This document shows positions 20,070 to 36,452 of a stretch of 64,000 nt of DNA, piece by piece. Location of the stretch: positions 11,617,187 to 11,681,186 of the forward strand of contig OZ316898.1 in NCBI GenBank assembly GCA_973895155.1, read 5' to 3'. Below the pieces are notes generated by a model. That model made no database searches and was not told where the DNA came from. It saw only the letters and a list, made by a program, of their open reading frames with translations. Position numbers and translations under genes: made by a program. The stretch comes from Marsupella aquatica (Eukaryota; Plantae; Marchantiophyta). Numbering within the stretch: the stretch's first letter is position 1; each line of letters begins with the position of its first letter.

Positions 20070-21495
20070 AAATAGGAATGGTATTCTATAATGCGAGCAA
20101 ATATGAATATTGTTAGCGAAGGGAGTATTGTTAGCGAGACACTTGTGGTTTTAAATTTCTTTTGCTTTTTGCTGCTTTTCTATTTTGTGTGTGTTTATTA
20201 TGACTCCAGATGGCTAACAGATAGCTAGCAAAAAGAGGGGTCCCCAAAATGGATGTTTTCAACAAGGTTACTGTTAGCGAGGCAATTGCATATAGAAAAA
20301 TTAGGGGTCATGTGAGGAAATTTTTTGCTCATGCGAGGAAAATTTCTACTGTTTCCTCGCACTCTACAATGACCCCGTCGATGGTAGAGTGTTAACATAT
20401 GGGGCACGTTGGAAGTTCAGTTCAGTACGTCTAGTTTCAGATGCAGAAAAGGCGTAGATTGGGTTTGACAGGCAGGAAAAAACTAGCTGGGTGCCCTCCG
20501 GATGTGCTGATGTTGGCAATTGGCATTTCCATTGTGTTATTTGACTCGAGAAGTAACTTGAATGTAAATAGAGTTATGATTCTGTCTCGGGCAGGTCAAT
20601 GTGGGGTTCAATGGGGGTGAAGCTTGCGCTTTGCCGTAGGCTCCCTTGTTGAGCTTGTAAAGCTGCTGGATGATCCAGCAAACACGTTGCATGTCATCTG
20701 ATTTGCTGTTGGCTAGTATATCAGTGAGGAGGCCATCTTCACTGCTCTTCTTGAACTTGTCTATTAAGGAAATCGCTTGGGCACGGGTGAGGTCCACTAT
20801 CATGTTGATGGGCATCTTGAAGAGCAACAGAGTAAATGATCACAACTCCACAAAGAGTGTCTTCCCAGCTCCTTAATCCCTGTCCAAGCCACAATCAGCA
20901 CAACTTGATGCAATTGTGAAACACATAGTAATCTATACAAAACATAAGGTTCTGTCAACCACCTTTACACTAATATGTAAACTAACGCTGTCTACACAAA
21001 GTTCTCACAAAACTGAAGGCGTTAGAGAATCCAAGCGTTTCTTTCAACTGGTGCTATTTCAAAAAATTCACAGTTAAATTCAAAATTAAAAAATATAATG
21101 CAAAATATTGATATATCAATGAAGAGAATTCCAAATGATCACTTATTTTACCCTATTCTATTATTTCTTTAATTCAAGTGTTACTCTTCATCATTGGGTT
21201 ATTTTTACAGGGTCTAACCATTTTTCTTTGCCATCCCACAAAGACTAATCATTAGGATGTTCTTCTTGCACAACTAGATTTTCTGGTTTGTGACCAGTGG
21301 CTGATGTGGCTCAGTATGGTGCCAAGTATTTTGGAAGGAGTTTCCCATGAGTTTGGTAACAAGAATATTGGGAAAGATCTCAATCCTTTTGTACTTGGGG
21401 GTCAAATTTCTCATAAGGAGTGGCCCTTTAATCTGCAAGAATCTTGAGAAAGATCTCAGCCCGTTGCTATTTGGAATTCAGGGCAACACTCAAAT

Positions 21496-21706
21496 TGTTG
21501 GAACTTTGTAGAAAGTTCCTGCCGTTACAAGGAAGATCTGATCTTGTCGTGTAGCGCGTATTTATCGGGCTCTCTCTCTGCTGTCGGATTTAGGGTCTCT
21601 CTCCTGGACGTTGATTCCCTTCCTTCCTGGCTGCAGCTGCCGCTACTTATTGGTTCATCGTCTCTGCACCTTTAGTTCATATTATGGTATGTTCACGTTT
21701 TCAACA
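21496..21706 (+). repeat. 5' LTR (211 bp)
   Basis: TGTTGGAAC...TTTTCAACA; 2 substitutions versus the 3' LTR. Confidence 0.97.
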
Positions 21707-21718
21707 TGGTATCAGAGC
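21707..21718 (+). promoter_or_regulatory. Primer binding site (tRNA-iMet)
   Basis: TGGTATCAGAGC immediately after the 5' LTR. Confidence 0.95.
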
Positions 21719-21878
21719 GCAGCTCTGCTCACTCTCAATAGATTAGATTAGTAGAGGCGTAGTAATCCAGGTAGAAAAGTTCCCTGGCCTCTTACTCCTG
21801 CATCTGAAGTCGCGACAGTAGTCCTGAGTGAAAGTTCCTCATAGCACAGACTGTAGCGACAGATCGTGTCATTCAGAC

Positions 21879-24800
21879 ATGGAATTGTTAAAGTGTTTTT
21901 CTGAGAGTGACAAATTAGAAGGATCCAACAATCATTTAGCGTGGACCATCCTCGTCAAGAATATGCTGAAACGTGATGAACTCTTCACTGAGCTCAACTT
22001 TGGCGTCAAGCCTGATGCCAATGGTCAAGTCCAAGATGGCGGAGCTCATCTCACTACACGTGAGATTGAAAAGAAGAAAGTACGGGCCACTTCGATTCTC
22101 GCTGCTACAGTGAAAGCAAAATACCTGCCGACAGTTGATAAGTACTCAGATGACCCAGCCAAGTGCTGGGACCACTTCCAACAACGATTTGGTGGTGCTC
22201 TTGTGCAGAGACGATTAATGCTGGAACAGAAGCTTGCAGACATTCGCATGTCTGACGGCACCTCTGTGGAAGACTTCATCAACAACGTTAACAATATTGG
22301 AAGACTTCATCAACAACGTTAACAATATTGCTGGCCAACTGAGCAGCATTGATGCTGAAGTTGCCGATGACAAACTGATTCACCTGGTCCTTCGTGGACT
22401 CCCCCCTAGCTGGGGTTCTTTCGTGTCTGTTTTTTCTTCTGACCTCTCTCGCAACCCTCCTCCTCAGTTTTCCACTCTCATTGAGCGTATGCAGGCTGAA
22501 GAACTCTGGAAGAAGAACTCTCAGCGCGAACCTGTTGAAGAGGCACTGTCGGTCACTCGGTTTACCAGACCAAATGGTCGTGGTCGTGGAAGGTTTCAGC
22601 CTTGGCCTTCCTTCTCTGACCCTCCTCGCTATCCCTCTTACTCTCGTGCTGCAGGAGGACATGGGATCCGCCGCAACACCACCTGCAACTACTACGGCAA
22701 ACCTGGACATTGGGAGGCTGACTGCGATCTCAAGAAGGTGGATGAGCAGATTGCTCAGCTACAACTTAAAGCTGCTGGCTTACGACGCTTTCGTCCTCAA
22801 GCCAACGTTGCTGAGATCTCTCATGAGGACGAAGATTTCTACGAAGAGGAAGAAGAAGAAGAAGGCGAACCCAGTAACACTGCTCTTGAAGCCAATTTCA
22901 CTGAGATTCTTCCTAGTCGCGAATCTAGTAATTGGATCTTAGACTCAGGAGCTAGTGTCCATGTCTCTGGCGACAAGTCTGTCTTCTCTGGACTAAATCC
23001 GTCTACTAGCTCAGGATCGGTCGCCACTGCAAGTGGTACCAAACTTCTTGTTGCTGGACACGGTACTGTCAACATTGATACAAATAAAACAGTCCGCAAT
23101 GTTCTCTATGTGCCCGGTCTTTGTCGTAATCTTATGTCCGTAGGTAATCTCACTGATGCTGGTCATAATGTTATGTTTAATTCCAAGTCCTGCCTTGTAT
23201 TCGACAAAGATAACCCTCACAAAATCTTTCTCCGCGGCACTAGGGACCCCGCAAATCATCTATATCGGTTAACCCAGTCTCTCCCATCTATTCCACCCTC
23301 ATCAACCTCCTCCCGCCTACTACCTCGGGTTCTATCTCAATCTGCACCTGTACTTAGTGTTGAATCTTCTCCCTCAGACTGTCCTGTCGATCTATGGCAC
23401 CGACATCTGTGTCACGTGAACTTTCAAATGGTCCACCATATGTCTCATCGCGGTCTTGCTCTCGGTCTTCCATCTTTACCGAGAGTCAAACGGTCTTGTG
23501 AAACTTGTACTGTCGCCAAACATCATCGCAACAAGACACCCAAGTCGTCTGCTACTCGTACTTCTCGCCCTTTGGAGATTATTCACTCTGACCTTTGTGG
23601 TCCTTTTCCTGTCTCCACATCTTAAAAATACATACTCACGTTTATAGATGACTTCTCTCGATTTACTTGGGTTTATTTCCTTTCTAGTAAAGCCGAAACT
23701 TTCCAACGTTTCCAGGAATTCAAGCTTCTTGTCGAGAAGCAATTCTCGCTTCCGATCTCATGTCTCCGTTCCGATCGCGGAGGTGAGTACCTATCCACCG
23801 AATTTCTTGCCTTCTGTCGACAACACGGCATCCGTTGTCAGCTGACCGTGGCTCGCACACCTCATCAGAATGGAGTGGCCGAACGAAAAAATCGTACCCT
23901 CCTTGAGGGCACCAGGAGCATTCTCCTCAGCTCTAATATTCCCATCTCCTTATGGACTGAAGCTGTTCGCACTGCTAACTATACACAAAATCATTGCGGC
24001 ACTTGGGCACTTCACCTGCAAACCCCATTCGAAGCTTTACACGGTAAGAAACCAGATCTTTCACATCTCCGTGTTATTGGCAGCCTTGCTTATGTTCTTG
24101 CCCGGGAACCTCAAATCCATGTGGTTGTTGCATATACAGCTCTTCGGTGATGGTGCCGTTGAGAAAGGCAGTGATCACGTCCATATGGTGTAGGTCCCAG
24201 CCGTTTGCCACAGCCAGAGCGATAACAGTCCGTAGGGTGGACCATTTTACAACGGGAGCAAAAGTCTCTAAATAATCAACACCATAACGTTGTTCGAGAC
24301 CACGAGCAACAAGTCGTGCCTTTAGCCTGAAGTGAGTTGGATGCAGACATGGCTTGGAGCGAAGAACCCACTTAGCAGACAAAGCACGTTTACCTGGTGG
24401 AAGTGGAACCAGATCCCATGTGCCCATCTTGATGAGCGCATCAAATTCCTCCTTCATAGCTGCTCACCATAGGGGATGGGCAAGAGCTTCGGTAACACTG
24501 ATGTCGTCAGACTCAGGTTGAGAGGATTCCACAAGGAATGTGTCAAGCTGATCAGCCCGATTGGTCATGTCATAGTCGTTATGCCAAGATGGAGGGCGTC
24601 TGACACGGAGAGAATGACGAGTGGCAGGAGCATGAGAGTCGGGGAGCTCGGTGTAGTCAGGAATCTCGATGTCAGCATCCGGAGGCACAGGCGGAACGAG
24701 CTCAACACCGTTAGGGGCAGCGACAGAGTTGTCATCAGTTGGGGCAGCAGCAGAGTTGTCGATGGTAGCTACCCCCTCTTGGTCAGGAGGACCAACAAAA

Positions 24801-26224
24801 GGTTCACCAAGCAAGTGTTGAAAGATCTTGGTGACAGCAGCATGATTAGAGGGGAAGTCCCCACGGATAGACTCATGAATGCTAACATTGGAGGCAATGA
24901 TAATACGTCTTCGAGAGGGGTCATAGCAACGATATGCTTTAGATTGTTCATCGTATCCTAGCAGGACAGTCTGGAGGGTCTTGGCGCTGAGTTTAGTGCG
25001 TAAGTGAGGAGGAACAAGAACATCTGGTCTGTCGTCTTCGCCGCTCCCTTTACGGCCTCAAGCAATCACCCCGTGCTTGGTACGAAGAAATAAATTCCTA
25101 TCTGATTGCTTCCGGATGGACCAGGAGCATGGCTGACAACAACTTATACTTCCTTCGTGAAGGCTCATCTATTGTGATTCTCATGCTCTACGTGGACGAC
25201 CTCCTAGTCACTGGTAGCGATTCGGAGAAAATTGCTGAGATCAAATCTCAACTCCACAATCGATACGACATGAAGGACCTTGGTCTTGTCCAAAAATATC
25301 TGGGCATTGAATTCCAACGTACGTCTGCTGGGCTATTTCTACACCAAACTTCCTACTGCCAACAACTTGTTGCTGAATACGGCATGACCGGGGGCACACC
25401 TGAATTTATTCCTCTTCCTGAAGGCCATGTTCTCACGTCAGACAAATACACCTCCTGTGGATGTCTCTGATTATTGTCATGCAGTTGGGAAACTTATATT
25501 TCTCACTCACACTCGTCCCGACATTGCCTATGCTGTCGGCATCGTTAGTCGCTACATGACTCGGCCTCAACAAAGTCACTGGGAATCTGTCAAACACATT
25601 CTTCGCTATCTTAGTCACACGACTGACTACGGTATTCATTATCAAAAATCTCCCTGCCCTCTTCTTACTGGCATTACCGATGCTGATTTCTTGGGCTGCC
25701 CTGAAACTCATCGTTCCATTGGCGCTTATCTCTTTCAACTCGCTTCGGGCCCAATTTCCTGGTCTAGCAAGCAACAACCTACTGTTTCAGACAGTACCAC
25801 TGAAGCGGAGTACAAAGCGCTCTCTGAGGGAGCAAAGGAAGGAGTCTACATTTGTCGTCTACTCTCTGAGCTCAGCTCCGACTCCTCTCTCCAGGTTCCT
25901 CTTACCTTTTCCAACCTGTCTATTCAGCAAGATCTTTCGCAAGCAGCTATTCCCTCTGCTCTTGACCTTCACCTACACTGTGATAATCAAGGCTCTATAA
26001 AACTCGCTCGCAATCCAGTTTTTCACGCCAGGACCAAGCACATAGAGGGGAAACACCATTTCATTCGTGAACGTGTGCTTGAAAGGGAAATTTCACTTTC
26101 TTACATTAATTCTGTTGATAATCCTGCTGACTTGCTCACCAAGCCACTAAGTCGCCTCAAATTTGAGAAACACAGAACCTTTACTGGAGTCAAATCAATT
26201 AAAGCCGCTCTCACTGCCAACTAG
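21879..26224 (+). pseudogene. Copia gag-pol polyprotein, disrupted
   Basis: Motifs: gag with zinc knuckle CNY(Y)GKPGHWEADC, protease WILDSGAS, LWHRHLCH/CETC, integrase HSDLCGP/RSDRGGEY/NGVAERKNR, RT KARLVARG/MDVITAFLNG/LYGLKQ/YVDD, RNase H TDADF/EAEY/CDNQ/ADLLTK. Lesions: 31-bp duplication 22267-22328, stops at 23623-23625 and 24464-24466, inversion 24101-25014, frameshift ~25445. Confidence 0.95.
24101..25014 (-). other. Inverted segment of pol bounded by 9-bp inverted repeats
   Basis: ATGTTCTTG at 24092-24100 and CAAGAACAT at 25015-25023. Re-inverting restores AYVL-VPPHLRTKL and FEVPG-QEHLVCRL in frame. Confidence 0.93.
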
Positions 26225-26229
26225 CCTAC

Positions 26230-29200
26230 TGTATGCAAGAAGGGTGTCCAACACTATCTCTGGGGGTGTGCGTCGGAGTGAAAGGTTGAGCAAGAAGGTG
26301 GTACCTACAATGGCAGAATGTGGAGATGACATGGATGCTGCACAGGTGGGTGCAAACACTAGACAAGAAGATGCAGATGATGAATATTTTCCAGAGGAAA
26401 TGGATGAGGATGGGGGTTATGAAGATGAATACATTGCAGAGCAGCCCCAAAAGAAACAGGTAAGTAGTTTTCCCAACAAGGTTTTGAGTTAAAAACTCTT
26501 ATTTGGAGGTTTCATATGTTCAGTACTACACATATGTACCTTGCTTAGTTCCTGACATTGTAGTTGGTGATGTGATGCAGCGTCCTGCCAGTTCTGTTTT
26601 GCCTTCAAAACCTGTGCATGCACCATACCAGCAGGGGGGGCTGACCTTTGATCAAGGTTGGCAAGGTGGTAGTAGTGGTAGATCCCAGGCTGGTGCCCAA
26701 TACTATGGCAGGGGGCAAGCTCTAGGTTATGCCTATGGTAGAGGCAGAGCAGGTCCAAACCCACAGTCTCGTGGGTTTGGACGTCCACCTCAACCATGGG
26801 GATGTGAGTATATATCTATATGCCAGTTCTTTGTGAAGGCATGACACTCCTGAATTTCAGACTGCATATCAATTTTTGACATTGTTTGGGATGTATTGGA
26901 TTCAGACAACATGAAATTCTGTCCACCTACCATTGCATGCAGATTCTGCCCAACCTGATTGGGCAAATGCTAGTAATGATCAGTTCCAATGTCCACAAGG
27001 ACAAACATGGGTTGAACCAGGTTGGGAGGATGCTGGTGGGTCGTGGAATGAACAAGGTTGGGAAGGTGGTGAAGGTAATTGGCAAGGATATCAAAATACA
27101 GTACCTACAAACGCTGGAAGAGGGGCAGGTAATGTCTGATCTTGTCAGCAATGGAAGAACCCATTATATCTGGAGTCCATTCACGTGGGGGGGGGGGATT
27201 CTGCACATGTATAATGATAGAAAATGTATGTGTGCAGGTTGGACAGTCGAACCATCGACTCAAGTATTCACTAATGCCCCTATGCAGATGCAGCACGGAA
27301 GGGGGACAGGTATGTCGGTGAATGTTCAGTTGTTTTCCTACAATTTGTACTTAGTTTTCAGTACATATGTTTGCACACACATACCTAGAAAGTGACATCA
27401 TTCGGCCCCTGTACTAGGCTGGACAGGTGGTCCAGGGTCGCAACAATTTCAGAGTGCAGTCCCTGCACAGGCATCTACAGGCAGAGCTACAGGTATGTAT
27501 GTTTGAAGAATTTTTCTTGAAGTGAAGCATTGAATGTTGCCGTCATCCATTCTGCTGTATGTAGTTCTCAAGCATGAATGGCATTGTATTTTCCCAGGTG
27601 GCTTCAGAACCCCAGGTAGGGTGAATGAAGGGGTGGCCAATACAACGCCCAGTACTACCGAGAGCAGTGCACGAGGGGAGGTGACAAAGAAAGGGAACGT
27701 AAAGTTGAATGAGAGACAATGGGTGGATGCTGAGTGTCCTCGCAAGAACCGATGGCATGCTAATTTGAAAGCTGAAGTATTGCGTTGGTTAGATGTGAGT
27801 GTTATTAATTTTAAAAAACAGCATCCAAAAGATTGGAAGACTGTATGTGAAAATGTTGCTGGCAAATGGAATTATGTGGGCAGTGATGATGGCGTGGACA
27901 TAGGTTGCCTAGAGAGTACAACAGGGAAAATCATCAAGCAAGAGAGGTGGAGAATGCATAAGGCTTGGAAGGAAGGTGGGGAGAAGCCAGATATGCCTCC
28001 ACCAGCCAGTTGTGATGATAAAGTGTGGGCAAGGTTAGTAGCTTATTTTGTAACAGATGCTTCAAAAAAGAAGAGTTCACAGATGACCGAGGCCAGGTTG
28101 AGTGTTCAGAACCCTAATCTGACAGGAAGGACCGGCACTGCACCGACAGCTAAACGTTTGGTAAGAATGAATGGCCTAGCTATGTAATTTATGCTACACT
28201 ATGTACCGTTTTTTAGTGTAAACCCATACATGTAAACTTTGTTTTTTAGTGTACGTTCCCTGAATATTGATCGATAACTTGTGTTTGCCATGCATGTGCA
28301 GAAAGCCCAATTGGGGCAAAGCCTTTCAAAAGAAGAGTTGAGGGCTGAAATTGTGAACACCCGGGCTCAAGAGGGTGCATCTGAATCCTCCAAGCATGTA
28401 AGTTATATGAGTTATGATTGGTAATTGAATGACCTGCGTTGAATTTCAGGTGTACACTATATATAACATTGATTGTGCATATATTGCCCAACATTTCATA
28501 TGGAGTGATTGAACCTATACCCCTGTGTCATGTAGGGAGGTGGATCTTCACTTACAGAGATAAGTGGTCGTTTGAAGGCTGTCGAAACATGTCTTCCAGA
28601 GATCAATGAACGTTTGAATTCATTGACTGACTTGTTCCATGTGAACTTCAAGACATTAATGGAAGTTGTTGTGTCGGTGAGAGATAAAATTGATTCCAAT
28701 TCTGCAGGAGTTCCACCATCACCACTTGAGGTGGCAAAGTCGATGCACTCTTCTGGCATGCCAACGACATGTAGGCTTGAAGGTAAGGCCTTTACAACTG
28801 TGTGGGATATGATTATTAAATGTATAGTTTGAATTGACATTGTTTGTTGAATGTGTTATTTTCAGTAACATATATTGTGGTTGTTGTGTCCATAGAGAAT
28901 AAGACAGGTGCTACAGAGAAGAAATATGAGAACCTGGCAAATACTCGTTGTAATTTAGAGGCAACAAAGTTGCAGTCTGTACAAGCAACTTGTTTGACAG
29001 AGGGCAGTCAACCATGTTTGGATAAGGATGACATTGGCAAGGGAGTGGATGATATCAATGTTGGGGCAAATGAGGATATAAGCAAGCATGACAATGATAC
29101 CATTGAGCCAGATTCATGCTATGTAGATCTTGACTCCATTGCAGAGATAAATGATTTGCAGAATGTATCATTCTCAATGATAGGTGTGCCTCTTGTTGAG

Positions 29201-30547
29201 ATAAATCCAACCAAAGAGTTAGTTGGTATGACACTCCCAGGTGATGAACCTGCTACTGTGACAGTCCTAATAGAGGAACCTACTGAGCCTAGCTTCACTA
29301 CTGTGAAGAGAGGAAGCATGCGCACACGAAGCAAGTCTGCTGGTGGGAGCAAAGCCACGTCAAAGGTTTCATACAAACCTCCAAGAACGGTGCTGGCAGA
29401 AAGATCTAAAGTGGAAGTGGGGAAAGCACCTAATGCTGAGGGACAAAGTGGCTTGTTAGCTGTTGATGAGAGTGGAACACGAGTAGGATTTGGCAGAGTG
29501 CAGGTTGGTTCCACAACGTTCCATGGCAAGAGGATTCCCCCAAGTTATTCAGTAGTGTTAGTCACATTACTAGTGAAACCTAAAGTTGTCCTTCCCATTC
29601 CAAACACAAATGATGATCCTCCTCAAAAGACACTTGGAGATGCTGCAGGTTCTTTGGTATTATGGCCAAGCAAGTTCATAGAGGATCCATAACAATGTCA
29701 TGCCATTATTTGTTTGTAGTGTGAGTCATGTCATGTAGATTTTAGATGTCAAGAAGCAGTACAAGAATCATGTCCTCTTGGAGATTCATAGTATCATGCA
29801 TGTGCTTTCAGTTATCTCATCCTGCAGTCATCAATTATGAGTTCCTGTTTTGTCTGAATTACATTGATCACATTGTAAACTATTCCATTGGAATTTAAAT
29901 GATCTTCATTTTTTAGCAAGATTGTGATTGTGTTTAATTCTTATGAATGTTTTATGTAGGATCTGCTTATATGATGCTTTGTTTCATGTGGATGTCATTC
30001 ATGCTATGTTCATTTCTTGTATTCAATGTGTTATATTTCTAAAGTTAGAACATCAGTTTCTATGTATTGTAATGTGGAGTGCTCTCTCTCCTTATGAACT
30101 GTCCCTCTGTGTTCATTAGTCATGGTTATAACTTGCATGGTGAACCTTATTAGTTATAAACATGAGTATATAGAGTCCCAAATGGTTTTGTTGTGTGACG
30201 CGGGCCAGGGTCTCCATTGGTCTCTCCTATGACACTAAATGGTCACACGCTAGTCGTTGTTGAATGCGGGTAAGTCATGTATGTGACTTACTATGTGACT
30301 CGCTGAAGTCATATTGCAGTCACGTAGAAACAAGGCTAGACTCCACAATAAAGTCACAGATCAGTCACAAATGGGTATCAAGCAAGTTGCAAAGCCCAGT
30401 ATCAATAGTGACTTCCATTTTTTGGTCTCAACTTTTGCAACTCCAAGGGTCACAGCGTGGGTCAAGTCACGTTGAGTCACAATGAAGTCACATGAGCCAA
30501 AATGAGTCACATATTGCGGTCTCAGTTCACCTCGGATTCTTCTAGTG
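26230..30547 (+). mobile_element. Nested CACTA (En/Spm) element lacking its 5' end
   Basis: 3' TIR CACCTCGGATTCTTCTAGTG (reverse complement CACTAGAAGAA...) ends at 30547. Dense GTCAC/GTGAC subterminal repeats at ~30190-30520. TnpA-like gene present. No left CACTA terminus; left boundary approximate. Confidence 0.85.
26310..29692 (+). CDS. CACTA TnpA-like (Ptta/En/Spm family) protein, 9 exons, N-terminus possibly truncated
   Basis: Phase-consistent GT-AG exons 26310-26459, 26581-26803, 26943-27128, 27238-27309, 27418-27492, 27598-28160, 28302-28397, 28536-28782, 28896-29692. Motifs VWARLVAYF..KKKS.....R......GRTG and C-terminal FHGKRIP...V.V...LP.P...TLGDA.G..VLWP. Confidence 0.8.
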
Positions 30548-30578
30548 TTAACTATCTATCACTTTCTTATCCCTTCTG

Positions 30579-31241
30579 CTAATGCTCATCTATCTCATAC
30601 TCTACTGCTCTACGATGATACCTCATAAACTGCTCCGCCTCTACCAATGTTCTAAATGCCTCGTGACAATTCCCTGAATAACCCGTCACCTGCATGCTTG
30701 CATCTGCCCACGATCCATATATTCCAGGTACTCGACCCACTGCTACTGCATAGTACTACTTCGGCGCTACTCCTCCAGCAACCCGGCTCCCCTCTCGCTC
30801 CTCCGCCCTCTGCTGAACCCTCATCTTACTTGGCCATCTCCTCAGAATCGACGCTGCCGCATACTGTTGCTCCTTACTACATGGTTTCCATTGCTAGTCG
30901 ACTTTCATCTCCTCCTGTGTGTGCTTCTTCCTTGGTGTCTGCTCGGACTCAGAGGGGGCTACCAGCACACTCTTCGGCACTTTCGGTGGAGAAATCCATG
31001 CATCAGAGGGGGCTTCATCTCCTGCTTCGCTCTTGCCACCTGCCACTTTTTCGATCTCTTCATGACCACAATCGTCTTTCGGCTCCAGTTCTCTCACCAA
31101 GCGCGCCAACAGCTTCACTGTCTTGTGGGCAATTTGGAGCAGCAACCCCACTGCCTCTAACACTGTCCATAACGTTCTTAACACTGCACGACACATTGCC
31201 CGTCCTGTCTCGGTCTTCATTTCTCCTGTTTGGATCGACAT
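30579..31241 (-). pseudogene. Antisense extra ORF of the Copia element with a C-terminal RNase H1 N-terminal (Cauli_VI / hybrid-binding) domain; 2 in-frame TAG stops
   Basis: One 221-codon frame from ATG 31241, with internal stops at 30894-30896 and 30756-30758. Positions 30755-30624 read YYAVAVGRVPGIYGSWADASMQVTGYSGNCHEAFRTLVEAEQFM. Confidence 0.85.
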
Positions 31242-31264
31242 CCCTCTCAGACTAAATCTTCCTC

Positions 31265-31273
31265 GAGAGGGGG
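31265..31273 (+). promoter_or_regulatory. Polypurine tract
   Basis: GAGAGGGGG directly before the 3' LTR. Confidence 0.9.
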
Positions 31274-31484
31274 TGTTGGAACTTTGTAGAAAGTTCCTGC
31301 CGTTACGAGGAAGATCTGATCTTGTCGTGTAGCGCGTATTTATCGGGCTCTCTCTCTGCTGTCGGATTTAGGGTCTCTCTCCTGGACGTTGATTCCCTTC
31401 CTTCCCGGCTGCAGCTGCCGCTACTTATTGGTTCATCGTCTCTGCACCTTTAGTTCATATTATGGTATGTTCACGTTTTCAACA
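31274..31484 (+). repeat. 3' LTR (211 bp)
   Basis: Near-identical to 21496-21706 and followed by TSD CAAAT. Confidence 0.97.
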
Positions 31485-32053
31485 CAAATTTCTAATCAGG
31501 AGAGGATGCATTTGTCCACTCAGTCTGACCATCGCTGCTGGTTGCTTTGCATGCCAAATCCTGATCCAACAAGGTGAGCGCACCAAGAGAGACCTGACTC
31601 AGACTAACGAATGAGTCCCATAGTTGCAAACCCACACTATGCTCAATTCACTTGGACAATTTATCAAATATCTGTCCTCTCACAACAGGCCAAGCTCGCT
31701 TCCCACATGATTTCTGTCCGCACATGATTTCGTTTCCGCTGCCCCTTCTTCAGCTCCAATGCTCAGACTACAATCGCAGCCAATTGCAGGTGTGTTATAA
31801 TCATGGACATTGGGAGTGAAGAGAATCATTGAAATTTCATTGCAGAATTTTTCTCCAGTTGACAACGAATGCTCATCCATTCGAGAGATTTCGAAACAAT
31901 AAATCTAGTATTGAAACCTGGAGGTATTTATCTAGACATCAACTTCAGGAACTGGTCGACGTGCAGGTCGTAAAGCGATCACTCCATCAAGATCTCCACT
32001 GGATGCTCGGATTGTAATCATAATGCACTGTGGACGAAGCTTAGAGGTCATTG

Positions 32054-33115: not shown

Positions 33116-34315
<1,200 letters not shown>

Positions 34316-36189: not shown

Positions 36190-36452
36190 CCATAATTGGA
36201 TTGGGAAATTCCCAAACCCCATCTCTTCTTTAAACAAAAATAGTAAAAATTAAAGTCTCTCAAGCCTCTAAGTGCCTTAATGCCTGTTATCAGGGCATCA
36301 TGCATGGGCACCAACAGCCCCATAATTGGATTGTGAAATTCCTAAACCCCATTTCTTCTTTAAACAAAAATAGTAAAAATTATAATCTCTCAACCCTCTA
36401 AGTGTCTTAATGCCCCCGTTGTCAGGGCATCATGCATGGGCACCAACAGCCC
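36190..36452. repeat. 130-bp tandem duplication
   Basis: CCATAATTGGATTG.GAAATTCC...CAGGGCATCATGCATGGGCACCAACAGCCC starts at 36190 and 36320. Confidence 0.9.

What the first reader, a model, noticed from the sequence alone, without database searches (positions are those of the whole stretch)
30579..31241. Copia retrotransposon carries a hidden antisense gene with an RNase H1 hybrid-binding (Cauli_VI) domain
Seen: between the nested CACTA end and the PPT, the minus strand has one 221-codon frame starting 33 bp from the 3' LTR. It reads as an amphipathic/hydrophobic helix (VLRTLWTVLEAVGLLLQIAHKTVKLLARLV), a charged linker, then K*YYAVAVGRVPGIYGSWADASMQVTGYSGNCHEAFRTLVEAEQFM. Two TAG stops split it, so the ORF track misses the domain. 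Established: this matches the RNase H1 N-terminal / caulimovirus viroplasmin domain (Pfam Cauli_VI, consensus YYAVxxGRxxGIYxxWxxCxxQVxGYxGAxHKSFxTxxEA), which binds RNA:DNA hybrids and dsRNA. The domain also occurs in CaMV P6/TAV, a translational transactivator and silencing suppressor. Copia Pol RNase H has no such domain. Inference: this lineage encodes an accessory hybrid/dsRNA-binding protein, probably transcribed antisense from the 3' LTR. It could assist reverse transcription, shield replication intermediates, or counter siRNA silencing. I do not know of this architecture in plant Copia, but cannot confirm novelty without a search.
Basis: partly seen in the sequence, partly recalled or inferred. 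Interest (0 to 1): 0.88.

Follow-up and report, generated by a model that had tools for sequence, protein, structure and literature searches.

The report
Antisense hybrid-binding gene in Copia
A plant Copia retrotransposon lineage carries, backwards between its polymerase gene and its 3' LTR, a small conserved extra gene with the nucleic-acid-duplex-binding domain of RNase H1 but no nuclease; the copy in this window is a broken one.

Summary
The minus-strand frame 30579-31241 has 221 codons and two in-frame TAGs. Its last 58 residues hit Pfam Cauli_VI (RNase H1 N-terminal / hybrid-binding domain, HBD) at E 2.4e-17. It lies inside a complete Ty1/copia element (LTRs 21496-21706 and 31274-31484, TSD CAAAT), tail-to-tail with pol and 33 bp from the 3' LTR.

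It is not a one-off capture. Contigs from four public runs carry sister copies without the 4.3-kb nested repeat, and they read another letter at both stop codons. Two more diverged Copia elements (Logan contigs L001, L002; pol 66-81% identical) have intact 156- and 163-aa antisense ORFs at the same place. These ORFs share the same build: an N-terminal hydrophobic helix, a disordered linker and a C-terminal HBD. Third-codon-position changes dominate in the HBD.

Transcription and binding are untested. The family lacks the basic pair K59/K60 of human RNase H1. My preferred mechanism, a non-catalytic duplex binder that shields element-derived dsRNA or RNA:DNA from host silencing or nucleases, is inference only.

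First readers of this scan noted the same architecture at four other places of this genome.

Verdict: a real feature, a new variant of the known class of antisense extra ORFs in LTR retrotransposons.

The parts
21491..21495 (.). Target-site duplication CAAAT (left copy)
   Evidence: Same 5 bases at 31485-31489
21496..21706 (+). 5' LTR, 211 bp, TG..CA
   Evidence: Direct repeat with 31274-31484, 2 mismatches
21707..21718 (+). Primer-binding site TGGTATCAGAGC
   Evidence: Directly follows the 5' LTR; the assignment to initiator tRNA-Met is from general knowledge
21828..26224 (+). Degenerate gag-pol in Copia order (gag, protease, integrase, RT, RNase H); frame breaks and an inverted block at about 24077-25057
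   Evidence: Pfam Retrotran_gag_2, Pol_BBD, gag_pre-integrs, rve, SH3_retrovirus and RVT_2. The SH3 C part and the RVT_2 N half are found on the minus strand. The pol C-terminus is 66-81% identical to L001/L002 pol
26231..30547 (.). Nested 4317-bp piece of a very high-copy CACTA-like repeat, 5'-truncated, inserted in the spacer between the pol stop and the antisense-gene stop
   Evidence: Word depth is 1e3-1e5 against about 1e2 for the flanks. Contigs of 4 runs join 26230 to 30548/30550/30554. Loose ends at 26231 show that other copies run on leftwards. CACTAG terminus and GTGACT repeats at the right end only
30579..31241 (-). Antisense accessory ORF (pseudogene here), 220 codons plus stop. 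A second ATG at 31196 aligns with the start Met of the intact homologues
30627..30755 (-). Hybrid-binding domain (Cauli_VI / RNase H1 N-terminal domain)
   Evidence: PF01693 at E 2.4e-17; 1QHK at E 3e-6; the homologue's model matches 3BSU with TM 0.81-0.83
30756..30758 (-). Second in-frame TAG, directly before the HBD
   Evidence: All contigs laid over 30758 in 4 runs read another letter (table 3)
30894..30896 (-). First in-frame TAG
   Evidence: All contigs laid over 30896 in 4 runs read another letter (table 3)
31086..31214 (-). N-terminal hydrophobic/amphipathic helix (residues 9-52)
   Evidence: AlphaFold2 helix 9-52, pLDDT 85-96. Kyte-Doolittle 19-residue maximum is 1.54, borderline for a membrane segment
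31264..31273 (+). Polypurine tract, inside a block of about 22 nt (PPT plus LTR edge) that is identical in L001 and L002
31274..31484 (+). 3' LTR. A TATA-like ATAAATA on the minus strand at 31337-31343 lies about 100 nt upstream of the antisense ATG (not tested)
31485..31489 (.). Target-site duplication CAAAT (right copy)

Best explanation
SHOWN. The stretch is a dead copy of a real, lineage-specific accessory gene of a short-LTR Ty1/copia lineage. The gene fills the interval between the pol stop and the polypurine tract and reads antisense, tail-to-tail with pol. It encodes a protein of about 155-220 aa built of an N-terminal hydrophobic helix of about 45 residues, a fast-evolving disordered linker and a C-terminal RNase H1-type hybrid-binding domain. 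There is no nuclease domain. In this window the gene carries two private in-frame stops. Its host element is also dead: it has a 4.3-kb repeat fragment in the spacer, an inverted block in pol and frame breaks.

INFERRED (about 0.35-0.4 on its own). The gene is transcribed from an antisense promoter in or next to the 3' LTR. The protein acts as a non-catalytic duplex binder that sequesters element-derived dsRNA (sense genomic RNA paired with its own antisense mRNA) and/or RNA:DNA intermediates. This would keep them from the host's dicing/RdDM machinery or nucleases. The role would resemble that of the caulimovirus P6 protein, which carries the same domain. The helix would localise or multimerise the protein.
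For: The domain is real: PF01693 at E 2.4e-17 and 1QHK at E 3e-6.

The element is a complete Copia with LTRs, TSD, PBS, PPT and the Copia domain order.

Sister copies carry the gene.
- Contigs of 4 runs from 2 organisms bridge 26230 to 30548/50/54 without the insert.
- One 1267-nt contig, about 87% identical, runs from the pol end through the HBD and N-terminal regions into the LTR.
- Every contig laid over 30758 and 30896 reads another letter at the first base of each stop.

Independent families carry it too.
- L001 has the LTR edge and PPT, then an intact 156-aa ORF at 72-542, then convergent pol 66% identical to the window's, with RVT_2.
- L002 has 66 nt of LTR and the PPT, then an intact 163-aa ORF at 149-640, with the pol stop 14 nt away and pol 81% identical.
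- A 1-aa variant of the L001 protein occurs in a third run.
- The PPT/LTR-edge block is identical in all three elements.

The three proteins share the same three-part build.

There is coding constraint.
- HBD codon-position differences are 4/12/30 for L001-L002 and 18/10/33 for window-L001.
- HBD dN is 0.21-0.36 with dS saturated.
- Whole-ORF dN/dS for L001-L002 is about 0.19.
- No other long ORF is conserved in this interval.

Structure:
- P0136 models as helix 2-47, a linker with pLDDT below 50, and a beta-beta-alpha-beta-alpha domain.
- The best PDB match is the human RNase H1 HBD on an RNA/DNA duplex, 3BSU, with TM 0.81-0.83 and rmsd 1.6 A.
- The best viral matches are caulimovirus transactivator/viroplasmin proteins.
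- The window's own N-terminal piece models as helix 9-52.

The aromatic residues equivalent to human Y29 and W43 are kept.
Against: - There is no RNA evidence at all: no listed run is on record as RNA, so promoter, strand and expression are untested.
- Human K59 and K60 are E/Q and A/G in this family. K/R holds the K59 position in 83% of 346 related HBDs.
- The window's HBD core has net charge -2, so affinity for duplexes may be weak or the domain may be repurposed.
- N-terminal homology between the window and L001/L002 is weak: 17-19% identity and no BLASTP alignment. It rests on position, helix prediction and a few shared residues.
- dS is saturated, so dN/dS values are rough.
- Only three diverged families are in hand. 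Protein searches found no others.
- The window copy itself cannot make the protein.
Confidence: 0.6

Rival explanations
1. Same gene, but it serves replication. The free HBD would hold the RNA:DNA intermediate inside or near the virus-like particle, acting in trans as a processivity or positioning factor for the Copia RT/RNase H. Alternatively it would shield minus-strand intermediates and the PPT primer from host RNase H1.
For: In RNase H1 this domain binds the RNA:DNA duplex, as in the solved complex 3BSU, which is the top structural match. A retroelement makes exactly that substrate. The Copia RNase H region has no HBD of its own.
Against: The basic pair K59/K60 is missing. An antisense-encoded protein is not co-translated with Gag-Pol, so its packaging would need an extra signal. 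Unchecked first-reader notes report HBD-only cargo genes in DNA transposons of the same genome (s1-769232, s1-771461, s1-776084). Those elements have no reverse-transcription step.
Confidence: 0.2
2. Same gene, but the HBD no longer binds nucleic acid. The protein would be a small scaffold ('mini-viroplasmin'). The hydrophobic helix would drive self-assembly or membrane anchoring, and the HBD would serve as a protein-binding module that recruits host factors.
For: The K59 position holds E/Q, a minority state (12% of 346 HBDs), and the core is neutral to acidic. The helix is confidently predicted and borderline hydrophobic enough for a membrane, with KD19 of 1.5-1.7. The best viral fold matches are caulimovirus viroplasmin proteins.
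Against: Y29 and W43 equivalents, and an Arg after the FxT motif, are conserved, and basic residues flank the domain in L001/L002. No partner is known.
Confidence: 0.12
3. The selected product is the antisense RNA itself. It would act in copy-number control or in self-silencing through dsRNA with the genomic RNA, and the ORF would be incidental.
For: Antisense transcription of LTR retrotransposons with proposed regulatory roles is discussed in PMC7264820.
Against: A Pfam domain is kept at E 1e-17 in three elements whose DNA has diverged to 60-69% identity in that block, with changes concentrated at third codon positions and intact ORFs of 156/163 codons.
Confidence: 0.05
4. A one-off capture of a host RNase H1 fragment by this copy, or a part of the nested CACTA-like insert, with no family-level meaning.
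For: Gene-fragment capture by LTR retrotransposons is known (PMC7264820). A Cauli_VI gene captured by a single Helitron copy has been described in Pleurotus (PMC4289320).
Against: The segment is present in sister contigs that lack the insert and at the same position in two other Copia families. The HBD is C-terminal, not N-terminal as in RNase H1. The insert ends at 30547, outside the ORF.
Confidence: 0.02

Closest known systems
Hybrid-binding domain of eukaryotic RNase H1 (human 3BSU, yeast 1QHK; Pfam PF01693)
   Same: Sequence family (E 2.4e-17) and fold (TM 0.81-0.83 to 3BSU for the homologue P0136). The aromatic Y29 and W43 equivalents are conserved.
   Different: No RNase H catalytic domain follows. 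The domain sits at the C-terminus behind a helix and a linker. K59 and K60 equivalents are E/Q and A/G. The gene is encoded by a retrotransposon, not a host gene.
Caulimovirus P6 / transactivator-viroplasmin (the other founding member of PF01693)
   Same: A reverse-transcribing element carries the HBD in a non-nuclease accessory protein. P6 proteins are the best matches in the viral structure library, with up to 41-43% identity over the domain. From general knowledge, P6 also has an N-terminal self-association helix upstream of the domain and suppresses silencing.
   Different: P6 is about 420-540 aa with further RNA-binding and protein-binding regions, and it is encoded in sense. This protein is 155-220 aa, has only helix + linker + HBD, and is antisense. 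Colinearity of the helices was not shown.
Antisense additional ORFs between pol and 3' LTR (aORF-3R) of plant Ty3/gypsy elements: Grande gene23, RIRE2, Retand ORF4 (TRP28 domain)
   Same: Same position and orientation, and conserved within families; function unknown (PMC7264820, PMC11963269).
   Different: Those are in Gypsy (Tat/Retand) elements with POL-3'LTR regions of 3-6.5 kb. They encode TRP28 or Smc-like domains or nothing recognisable. Here the host is a Copia with a 0.5-0.7 kb interval fully occupied by the gene, and the domain has a known biochemical activity.
capE, a Cauli_VI-domain gene captured by a Helitron in Pleurotus ostreatus (PMC4289320)
   Same: A transposable element carries a PF01693 gene.
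   Different: It occurs in a fungal rolling-circle element, in one enlarged copy, and is described as a captured gene. It is not a conserved family feature.
Retroviral antisense genes driven from the 3' LTR (HTLV-1 HBZ)
   Same: An accessory protein is encoded antisense and starts next to the 3' LTR (discussed in PMC7264820).
   Different: The protein is unrelated (bZIP). An antisense promoter is demonstrated there and not here.

Membership tests
Pfam PF01693 Cauli_VI / RNase H1 hybrid-binding domain | HMM score above the curated gathering threshold | tested here: met
   63.4 bits against a cut-off of 21, E 2.4e-17, profile positions 2-44 of 44
Pfam PF01693 Cauli_VI / RNase H1 hybrid-binding domain | Beta-beta-alpha-beta-alpha fold superposable on a solved HBD | tested here: met
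   Tested on the intact homologue P0136, not on the window's broken copy: 3BSU TM 0.81-0.83 and rmsd 1.6 A over 45-47 columns, then 1QHK
Pfam PF01693 Cauli_VI / RNase H1 hybrid-binding domain | Conserved aromatic residues of the DNA-strand pocket (human Y29, W43) | tested here: met
   Y and W are present in the window, L001 and L002. In 346 related domains Y occurs in 94% and W in 76%
Pfam PF01693 Cauli_VI / RNase H1 hybrid-binding domain | Basic pair contacting the phosphate backbone (human K59, K60; mutated in the WKK binding-dead control, PMC8677849) | tested here: not met
   E-A in the window, Q-A in L001, Q-G in L002. K/R at the first position in 83% of 346 related domains
Pfam PF01693 Cauli_VI / RNase H1 hybrid-binding domain | Binds RNA:DNA hybrid (and dsRNA) | not testable with these tools
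   Needs EMSA or fluorescence polarisation with purified protein
Eukaryotic RNase H1 (enzyme) | RNase H catalytic domain (PF00075) C-terminal to the HBD | tested here: not met
   The only Pfam hit of the ORF pieces is Cauli_VI. P0136 and P0151 carry PF01693 only. The HBD is the C-terminal end of the protein
Ty1/copia LTR retrotransposon | Paired LTRs with TG..CA, 5-bp TSD, PBS and PPT | tested here: met
Ty1/copia LTR retrotransposon | Domain order gag, protease, integrase, RT, RNase H, with RVT_2-type RT | tested here: met
   Retrotran_gag_2, Pol_BBD, gag_pre-integrs, rve, RVT_2 in that order; one block is inverted in this copy
Antisense additional ORF between pol and 3' LTR (aORF-3R, PMC7264820) | Located between pol and the 3' LTR, antisense to gag-pol | tested here: met
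   30579-31241 on the minus strand, between the pol stop at 26224 (spacer plus insert) and the PPT at 31264
Antisense additional ORF between pol and 3' LTR (aORF-3R, PMC7264820) | Present in all or most copies of the family, not in one copy | tested here: inconclusive
   Present in sister contigs of 4 runs and in 2 other families. A full census of copies was not possible. One possible deletion derivative is seen (joint 30691 to 31258, weak)
Antisense additional ORF between pol and 3' LTR (aORF-3R, PMC7264820) | Antisense transcript | not tested
Caulimovirus P6 / transactivator-viroplasmin | Large multidomain protein (about 420-540 aa) with further RNA-binding and ribosome/eIF3-binding regions | tested here: not met
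   The protein is 156-220 aa with only helix + linker + HBD. P6 lengths are; the P6 domain list is from general knowledge
CACTA (En/Spm) transposon, for the nested insert 26231-30547 | CACTA terminal inverted repeats at both ends, subterminal repeats, 3-bp TSD | tested here: not met
   Only the right end has CACTAG plus GTGACT repeats. No left TIR is found within 3 mismatches, and other copies continue leftwards of 26231. The Transposase_24 hit is below the cut-off

The most novel reading that the evidence does not exclude
The helix + HBD protein would be a portable counter-defence or 'mini-viroplasmin' module that different transposon classes of this plant genome have each acquired. It is shown here for Copia; unchecked first-reader notes report it for a MULE and other DNA transposons. 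On this reading the module blunts duplex-RNA or R-loop-guided silencing. It would also tie the HBD of caulimovirus P6 to an older pool of such genes carried by transposable elements.
Probability: 0.2. Interest if true: 0.9.

Novelty: new variant of a known kind. Interest (0 to 1): 0.68.

Why it matters
Antisense extra ORFs between pol and the 3' LTR have been known for decades in plant Gypsy elements. A 2020 review states that none of their proteins shows clear similarity to anything (PMC7264820). The 2025 Retand survey found mainly a domain of unknown function (PMC11963269).

Here the extra gene sits in a compact Copia lineage and is conserved across diverged families. It carries a domain with a solved structure and a defined biochemical activity, so standard assays apply. 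The open question of what these antisense genes do becomes directly testable: does the protein bind RNA:DNA or dsRNA, does it suppress silencing, and where does it localise?

The finding also gives a second reverse-transcribing lineage, besides the caulimoviruses, that carries a free HBD without a nuclease.

I found no paper in the searchable library that links PF01693, viroplasmin or hybrid-binding domain with an LTR retrotransposon gene. That library is not complete.

Tried and rejected
- The search for homologous proteins with the 58-aa HBD piece and with the N-terminal piece found nothing. This is a blank within the tool's length and word limits only.
- The same tool with P0136 found only its own cluster, P0151 and one ordinary RNase H1.
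- The metagenome scan with alignment A3 gave 52 loci, all generic HBDs at about 40% identity. None has Copia pol or the N-terminal helix nearby. The first attempt with A2 had no usable conserved stretch.
- The viral-contig scan gave 9 loci from giant viruses and phages, none related in context.
- Exact look-ups of the window's 115-aa ORF and of its pol ORF are not on record.
- P0129 and P0023, which share a GNCH-type motif, are not in Copia context. One lies in a fungal genome.
- The ESM Atlas look-alikes of P0136 are Basidiomycota Cauli_VI hypotheticals. This is a lead only and was not followed.
- A second apparent HBD-like match at 26736-26752 on the plus strand is a chance 17-mer in a frame full of stops.
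- The plus-strand 199-aa ORF overlapping the gene has no counterpart in L001/L002.
There is no verdict.
- A paper search for the SRR18067 run numbers, to name the hosts of L001/L002, found nothing relevant. The neighbouring reductase gene points to Streptophyta only. 'Bryophyte' is not verified.
Full report
**1. The observation**

On the minus strand, 30579-31241 translates to 221 codons, with ATG at 31241 and a terminal TAG at 30581-30579. Two internal TAGs lie at 30896-30894 and 30758-30756.

The 58 residues after the second TAG hit Pfam PF01693 (Cauli_VI, 'Ribonuclease H1 N-terminal domain') at E 2.4e-17. The score is 63.4 bits against a curated cut-off of 21, over profile positions 2-44 of 44. 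The same piece hits the solved yeast RNase H1 N-terminal domain 1QHK at E 3e-6. The N-terminal 115-aa piece has no Pfam hit. AlphaFold2 models its residues 9-52 as one long helix with pLDDT 85-96, followed by disorder.

**2. The host element**

- 21496-21706 and 31274-31484 are 211-bp direct repeats with two mismatches and TG..CA ends.
- They are flanked by the 5-bp duplication CAAAT.
- The 5' LTR is followed by TGGTATCAGAGC, and the 3' LTR is preceded by GAGAGGGGG.
- Between them, on the plus strand, lie Retrotran_gag_2, Pol_BBD, gag_pre-integrs, rve, SH3_retrovirus and RVT_2. Integrase comes before RT, which is the Copia order.
- Pol ends at 26222-26224.

This copy is dead in several ways. 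Gag is split over two frames. A block at about 24077-25057 (the C part of SH3_retrovirus and the N half of RVT_2) reads on the minus strand. In addition, 26231-30547 is foreign.

**3. The nested piece**

Laying the contigs of four public runs on 25900-31600 gave three results.

- 26231-30547 has word depths of 1e3-1e5, against about 1e2 for the Copia flanks.
- Contigs in all four runs join 26230 to 30548, 30550 or 30554 with 1-11 other letters between.
- At 26231 other copies of the repeat run on leftwards.

The right end carries CACTAG and a cluster of GTGACT/AGTCAC subterminal repeats. No matching left terminus exists in the window. The Transposase_24 hit inside is below Pfam's cut-off. The piece is therefore a 5'-truncated fragment of a very abundant CACTA-like element, not a whole nested transposon. 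It sits in the 37-nt spacer between the pol stop and the stop of the antisense ORF, outside both.

**4. Is the antisense ORF a family feature?**

Yes, on three lines of evidence.

(a) Sister copies appear in the laid runs, which come from two organism labels and two studies.
- Near-identical contigs cover 30550-30732, 30703-30861 and 31017-31298.
- One of them continues straight into the pol end without the insert.
- A 1267-nt contig, about 87% identical, runs from the pol end through 30601-30895 and 30988-31413 into the LTR.
- At 30758 and 30896, the first bases of the two internal stop codons, every contig laid in all four runs reads another letter. The stops are therefore private to, or rare outside, the window's copy.
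- I only observed this. I built no consensus and no repaired frame.

(b) Independent families carry the same gene. A HMMER search of 1.84 billion representatives with the HBD piece gave 2156 hits, mostly multi-HBD proteins. The best single-domain hit was P0136, 156 aa and 62% identical.
- Its contig L001 starts with the reverse complement of the LTR edge plus PPT (CCAACA CCCCCTCTC). It then has the intact ORF at 72-542, followed by a convergent Copia pol. The pol is 66% identical to the window's C-terminus and is preceded by RVT_2.
- A 43%-identical relative, P0151 (163 aa), lies on L002. L002 has 66 nt of LTR, the same edge and PPT block, the intact ORF at 149-640, the pol stop 14 nt beyond, and pol 81% identical to the window's.
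- A one-residue variant of P0136 occurs in a third run.
- The block of about 22 nt comprising PPT and LTR edge is identical in the three elements.

(c) First readers of this scan noted the same architecture at four other places of this genome (s1-775355, s1-768021, s1-763467, s1-768052). These notes are unchecked and count as leads only.

**5. Coding constraint**

The three proteins align into the same build: helix, variable linker, HBD. The window's second Met (ATG at 31196) aligns with the start Met of the other two.

| Pair / region | Differences at codon positions 1/2/3 | Other measures |
|---|---|---|
| L001-L002, HBD | 4/12/30 | |
| window-L001, HBD | 18/10/33 | |
| HBD, all pairs | | dN 0.21-0.36, dS saturated |
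| L001-L002, whole ORF | | dN/dS about 0.19 |
| L001-L002, helix | 15/12/21 (weaker bias) | |
| Linker | none | |

No other long ORF is shared in this interval. The window's plus-strand 199-aa ORF has no counterpart in L001/L002. The selected product is therefore the protein in this frame, at least for the HBD.

**6. The protein**

The AlphaFold2 model of P0136, built on a five-row alignment, gives three parts:
- helix 2-47, pLDDT 81-92;
- a linker at 48-104, pLDDT below 50;
- a beta-beta-alpha-beta-alpha domain at 108-154.

Foldseek's best PDB matches are the six chains of 3BSU, the human RNase H1 HBD on an RNA/DNA 12-mer, with TM 0.78-0.83 and rmsd 1.6-1.7 A. 1QHK follows. In the viral library the best matches are caulimovirus transactivator/viroplasmin proteins.

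The helices reach Kyte-Doolittle 19-residue maxima of 1.54-1.72, which is borderline for a membrane segment. Basic residues follow them.

In the alignments to 3BSU and 1QHK the equivalents of human Y29 and W43 are kept. F58 is H. K59 is E (window) or Q (L001, L002). K60 is A or G. W43/K59/K60 is the triple used as the binding-dead HBD control (PMC8677849). Among 346 HBDs of the 153 closest proteins, K/R holds the K59 position in 83%, Q in 9% and E in 3%. The window's core has net charge -2, against a mean of +0.95. The fold and the aromatic pocket are canonical, but the basic clamp is not.

**7. How it most likely works**

Shown:
- a conserved antisense gene for a nuclease-free HBD protein in a Copia lineage;
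- this copy is a pseudogene in a dead element.

Inferred:
- The gene is transcribed from the 3' LTR side. A TATA-like ATAAATA lies on the minus strand at 31337-31343, about 100 nt upstream of the ATG. This is untested.
- Its mRNA is fully complementary to the 3' end of the genomic RNA, so the element inevitably makes dsRNA.
- I favour, at about 0.35-0.4, a duplex-sequestering protein that keeps this dsRNA and/or RNA:DNA intermediates from the host's silencing machinery or nucleases. This is by analogy with the role of P6 in caulimoviruses (general knowledge).
- Unchecked notes that DNA transposons of the same genome carry HBD-only genes (s1-769232, s1-771461, s1-776084) tilt me towards a silencing-related role rather than one specific to reverse transcription.

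The rivals are a trans-acting helper of reverse transcription (0.2), a scaffold that no longer binds nucleic acid (0.12), an RNA-only function (0.05) and a one-off capture (0.02, refuted by section 4).

**8. Comparison with what is known**

- Antisense extra ORFs between pol and the 3' LTR are known in Gypsy elements (Grande, RIRE2, Retand). The 2020 review says no clear similarity has been described for any of their proteins (PMC7264820). The 2025 Retand survey finds mostly TRP28 (PMC11963269).
- A Cauli_VI gene captured by one Helitron copy is reported in Pleurotus (PMC4289320).
- I found no paper in the searchable library that links this domain with an LTR-retrotransposon gene.
- The protein is a member of PF01693 by sequence and fold. 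It is not an RNase H1, because it has no catalytic domain. It is not a P6, because it is too small and lacks the other regions.

**9. Limits**

- There is no RNA evidence.
- The hosts of L001 and L002 are unknown.
A neighbouring intronless reductase gene resembles Streptophyta clusters, but 'bryophyte' is unverified.
- dS is saturated.
- N-terminal homology between the window and L001/L002 is weak.
- The structure of the HBD was modelled on a homologue, not on the broken window copy.

**10. Verdict**

Function and transcription remain open. It is a new variant of a known kind, with interest 0.68.

Noticed in passing
window 24077-25057: An inverted block inside pol. The C part of SH3_retrovirus and the N half of RVT_2 read on the minus strand, between rve (plus strand) and the C half of RVT_2 (plus strand). 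It may be a real rearrangement or an assembly error.
   Followed up: partly
window 26231-30547: A 4317-bp, 5'-truncated piece of a repeat whose word depth in four runs is 10-1000 times that of the flanks. It has a CACTAG end and GTGACT subterminal repeats on the right only. How a one-ended fragment came to sit cleanly in the 37-nt spacer is unexplained.
   Followed up: partly
window 26230 / 30548-30554: Sister copies differ in the short spacer between the pol stop and the antisense-gene stop. Three junction forms occur, with 1, 5 or 11 other letters (tables 5 and 5c).
   Followed up: no
window 30691-31258: Contigs in three runs join 30691 to 31258, skipping 566 bases. This may be a deletion derivative that lacks most of the antisense gene. 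The shorter side is only 22 letters, so the evidence is weak.
   Followed up: no
window 21828-22319 and 22219-23622: The gag domain Retrotran_gag_2 is split across two overlapping frames, which indicates a frameshift inside gag in this copy.
   Followed up: no
window 33116-34210 (minus strand): An intronless 364-aa short-chain dehydrogenase, 3-oxoacyl-ACP-reductase-like. Its nearest Atlas clusters are from Streptophyta.
   Followed up: partly
window 36190-36414: Two 95-nt direct repeats 130 nt apart, 93% identical.
   Followed up: no
L001 705-707: The pol of L001 stops about 52 codons earlier than the window's pol, so that element's pol is probably also damaged although its antisense ORF is intact.
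   Followed up: no
representative proteins P0001-P0011: Many of the closest HBD proteins carry 3-8 tandem hybrid-binding domains and no other recognisable part. Their origin and context were not examined.
   Followed up: no
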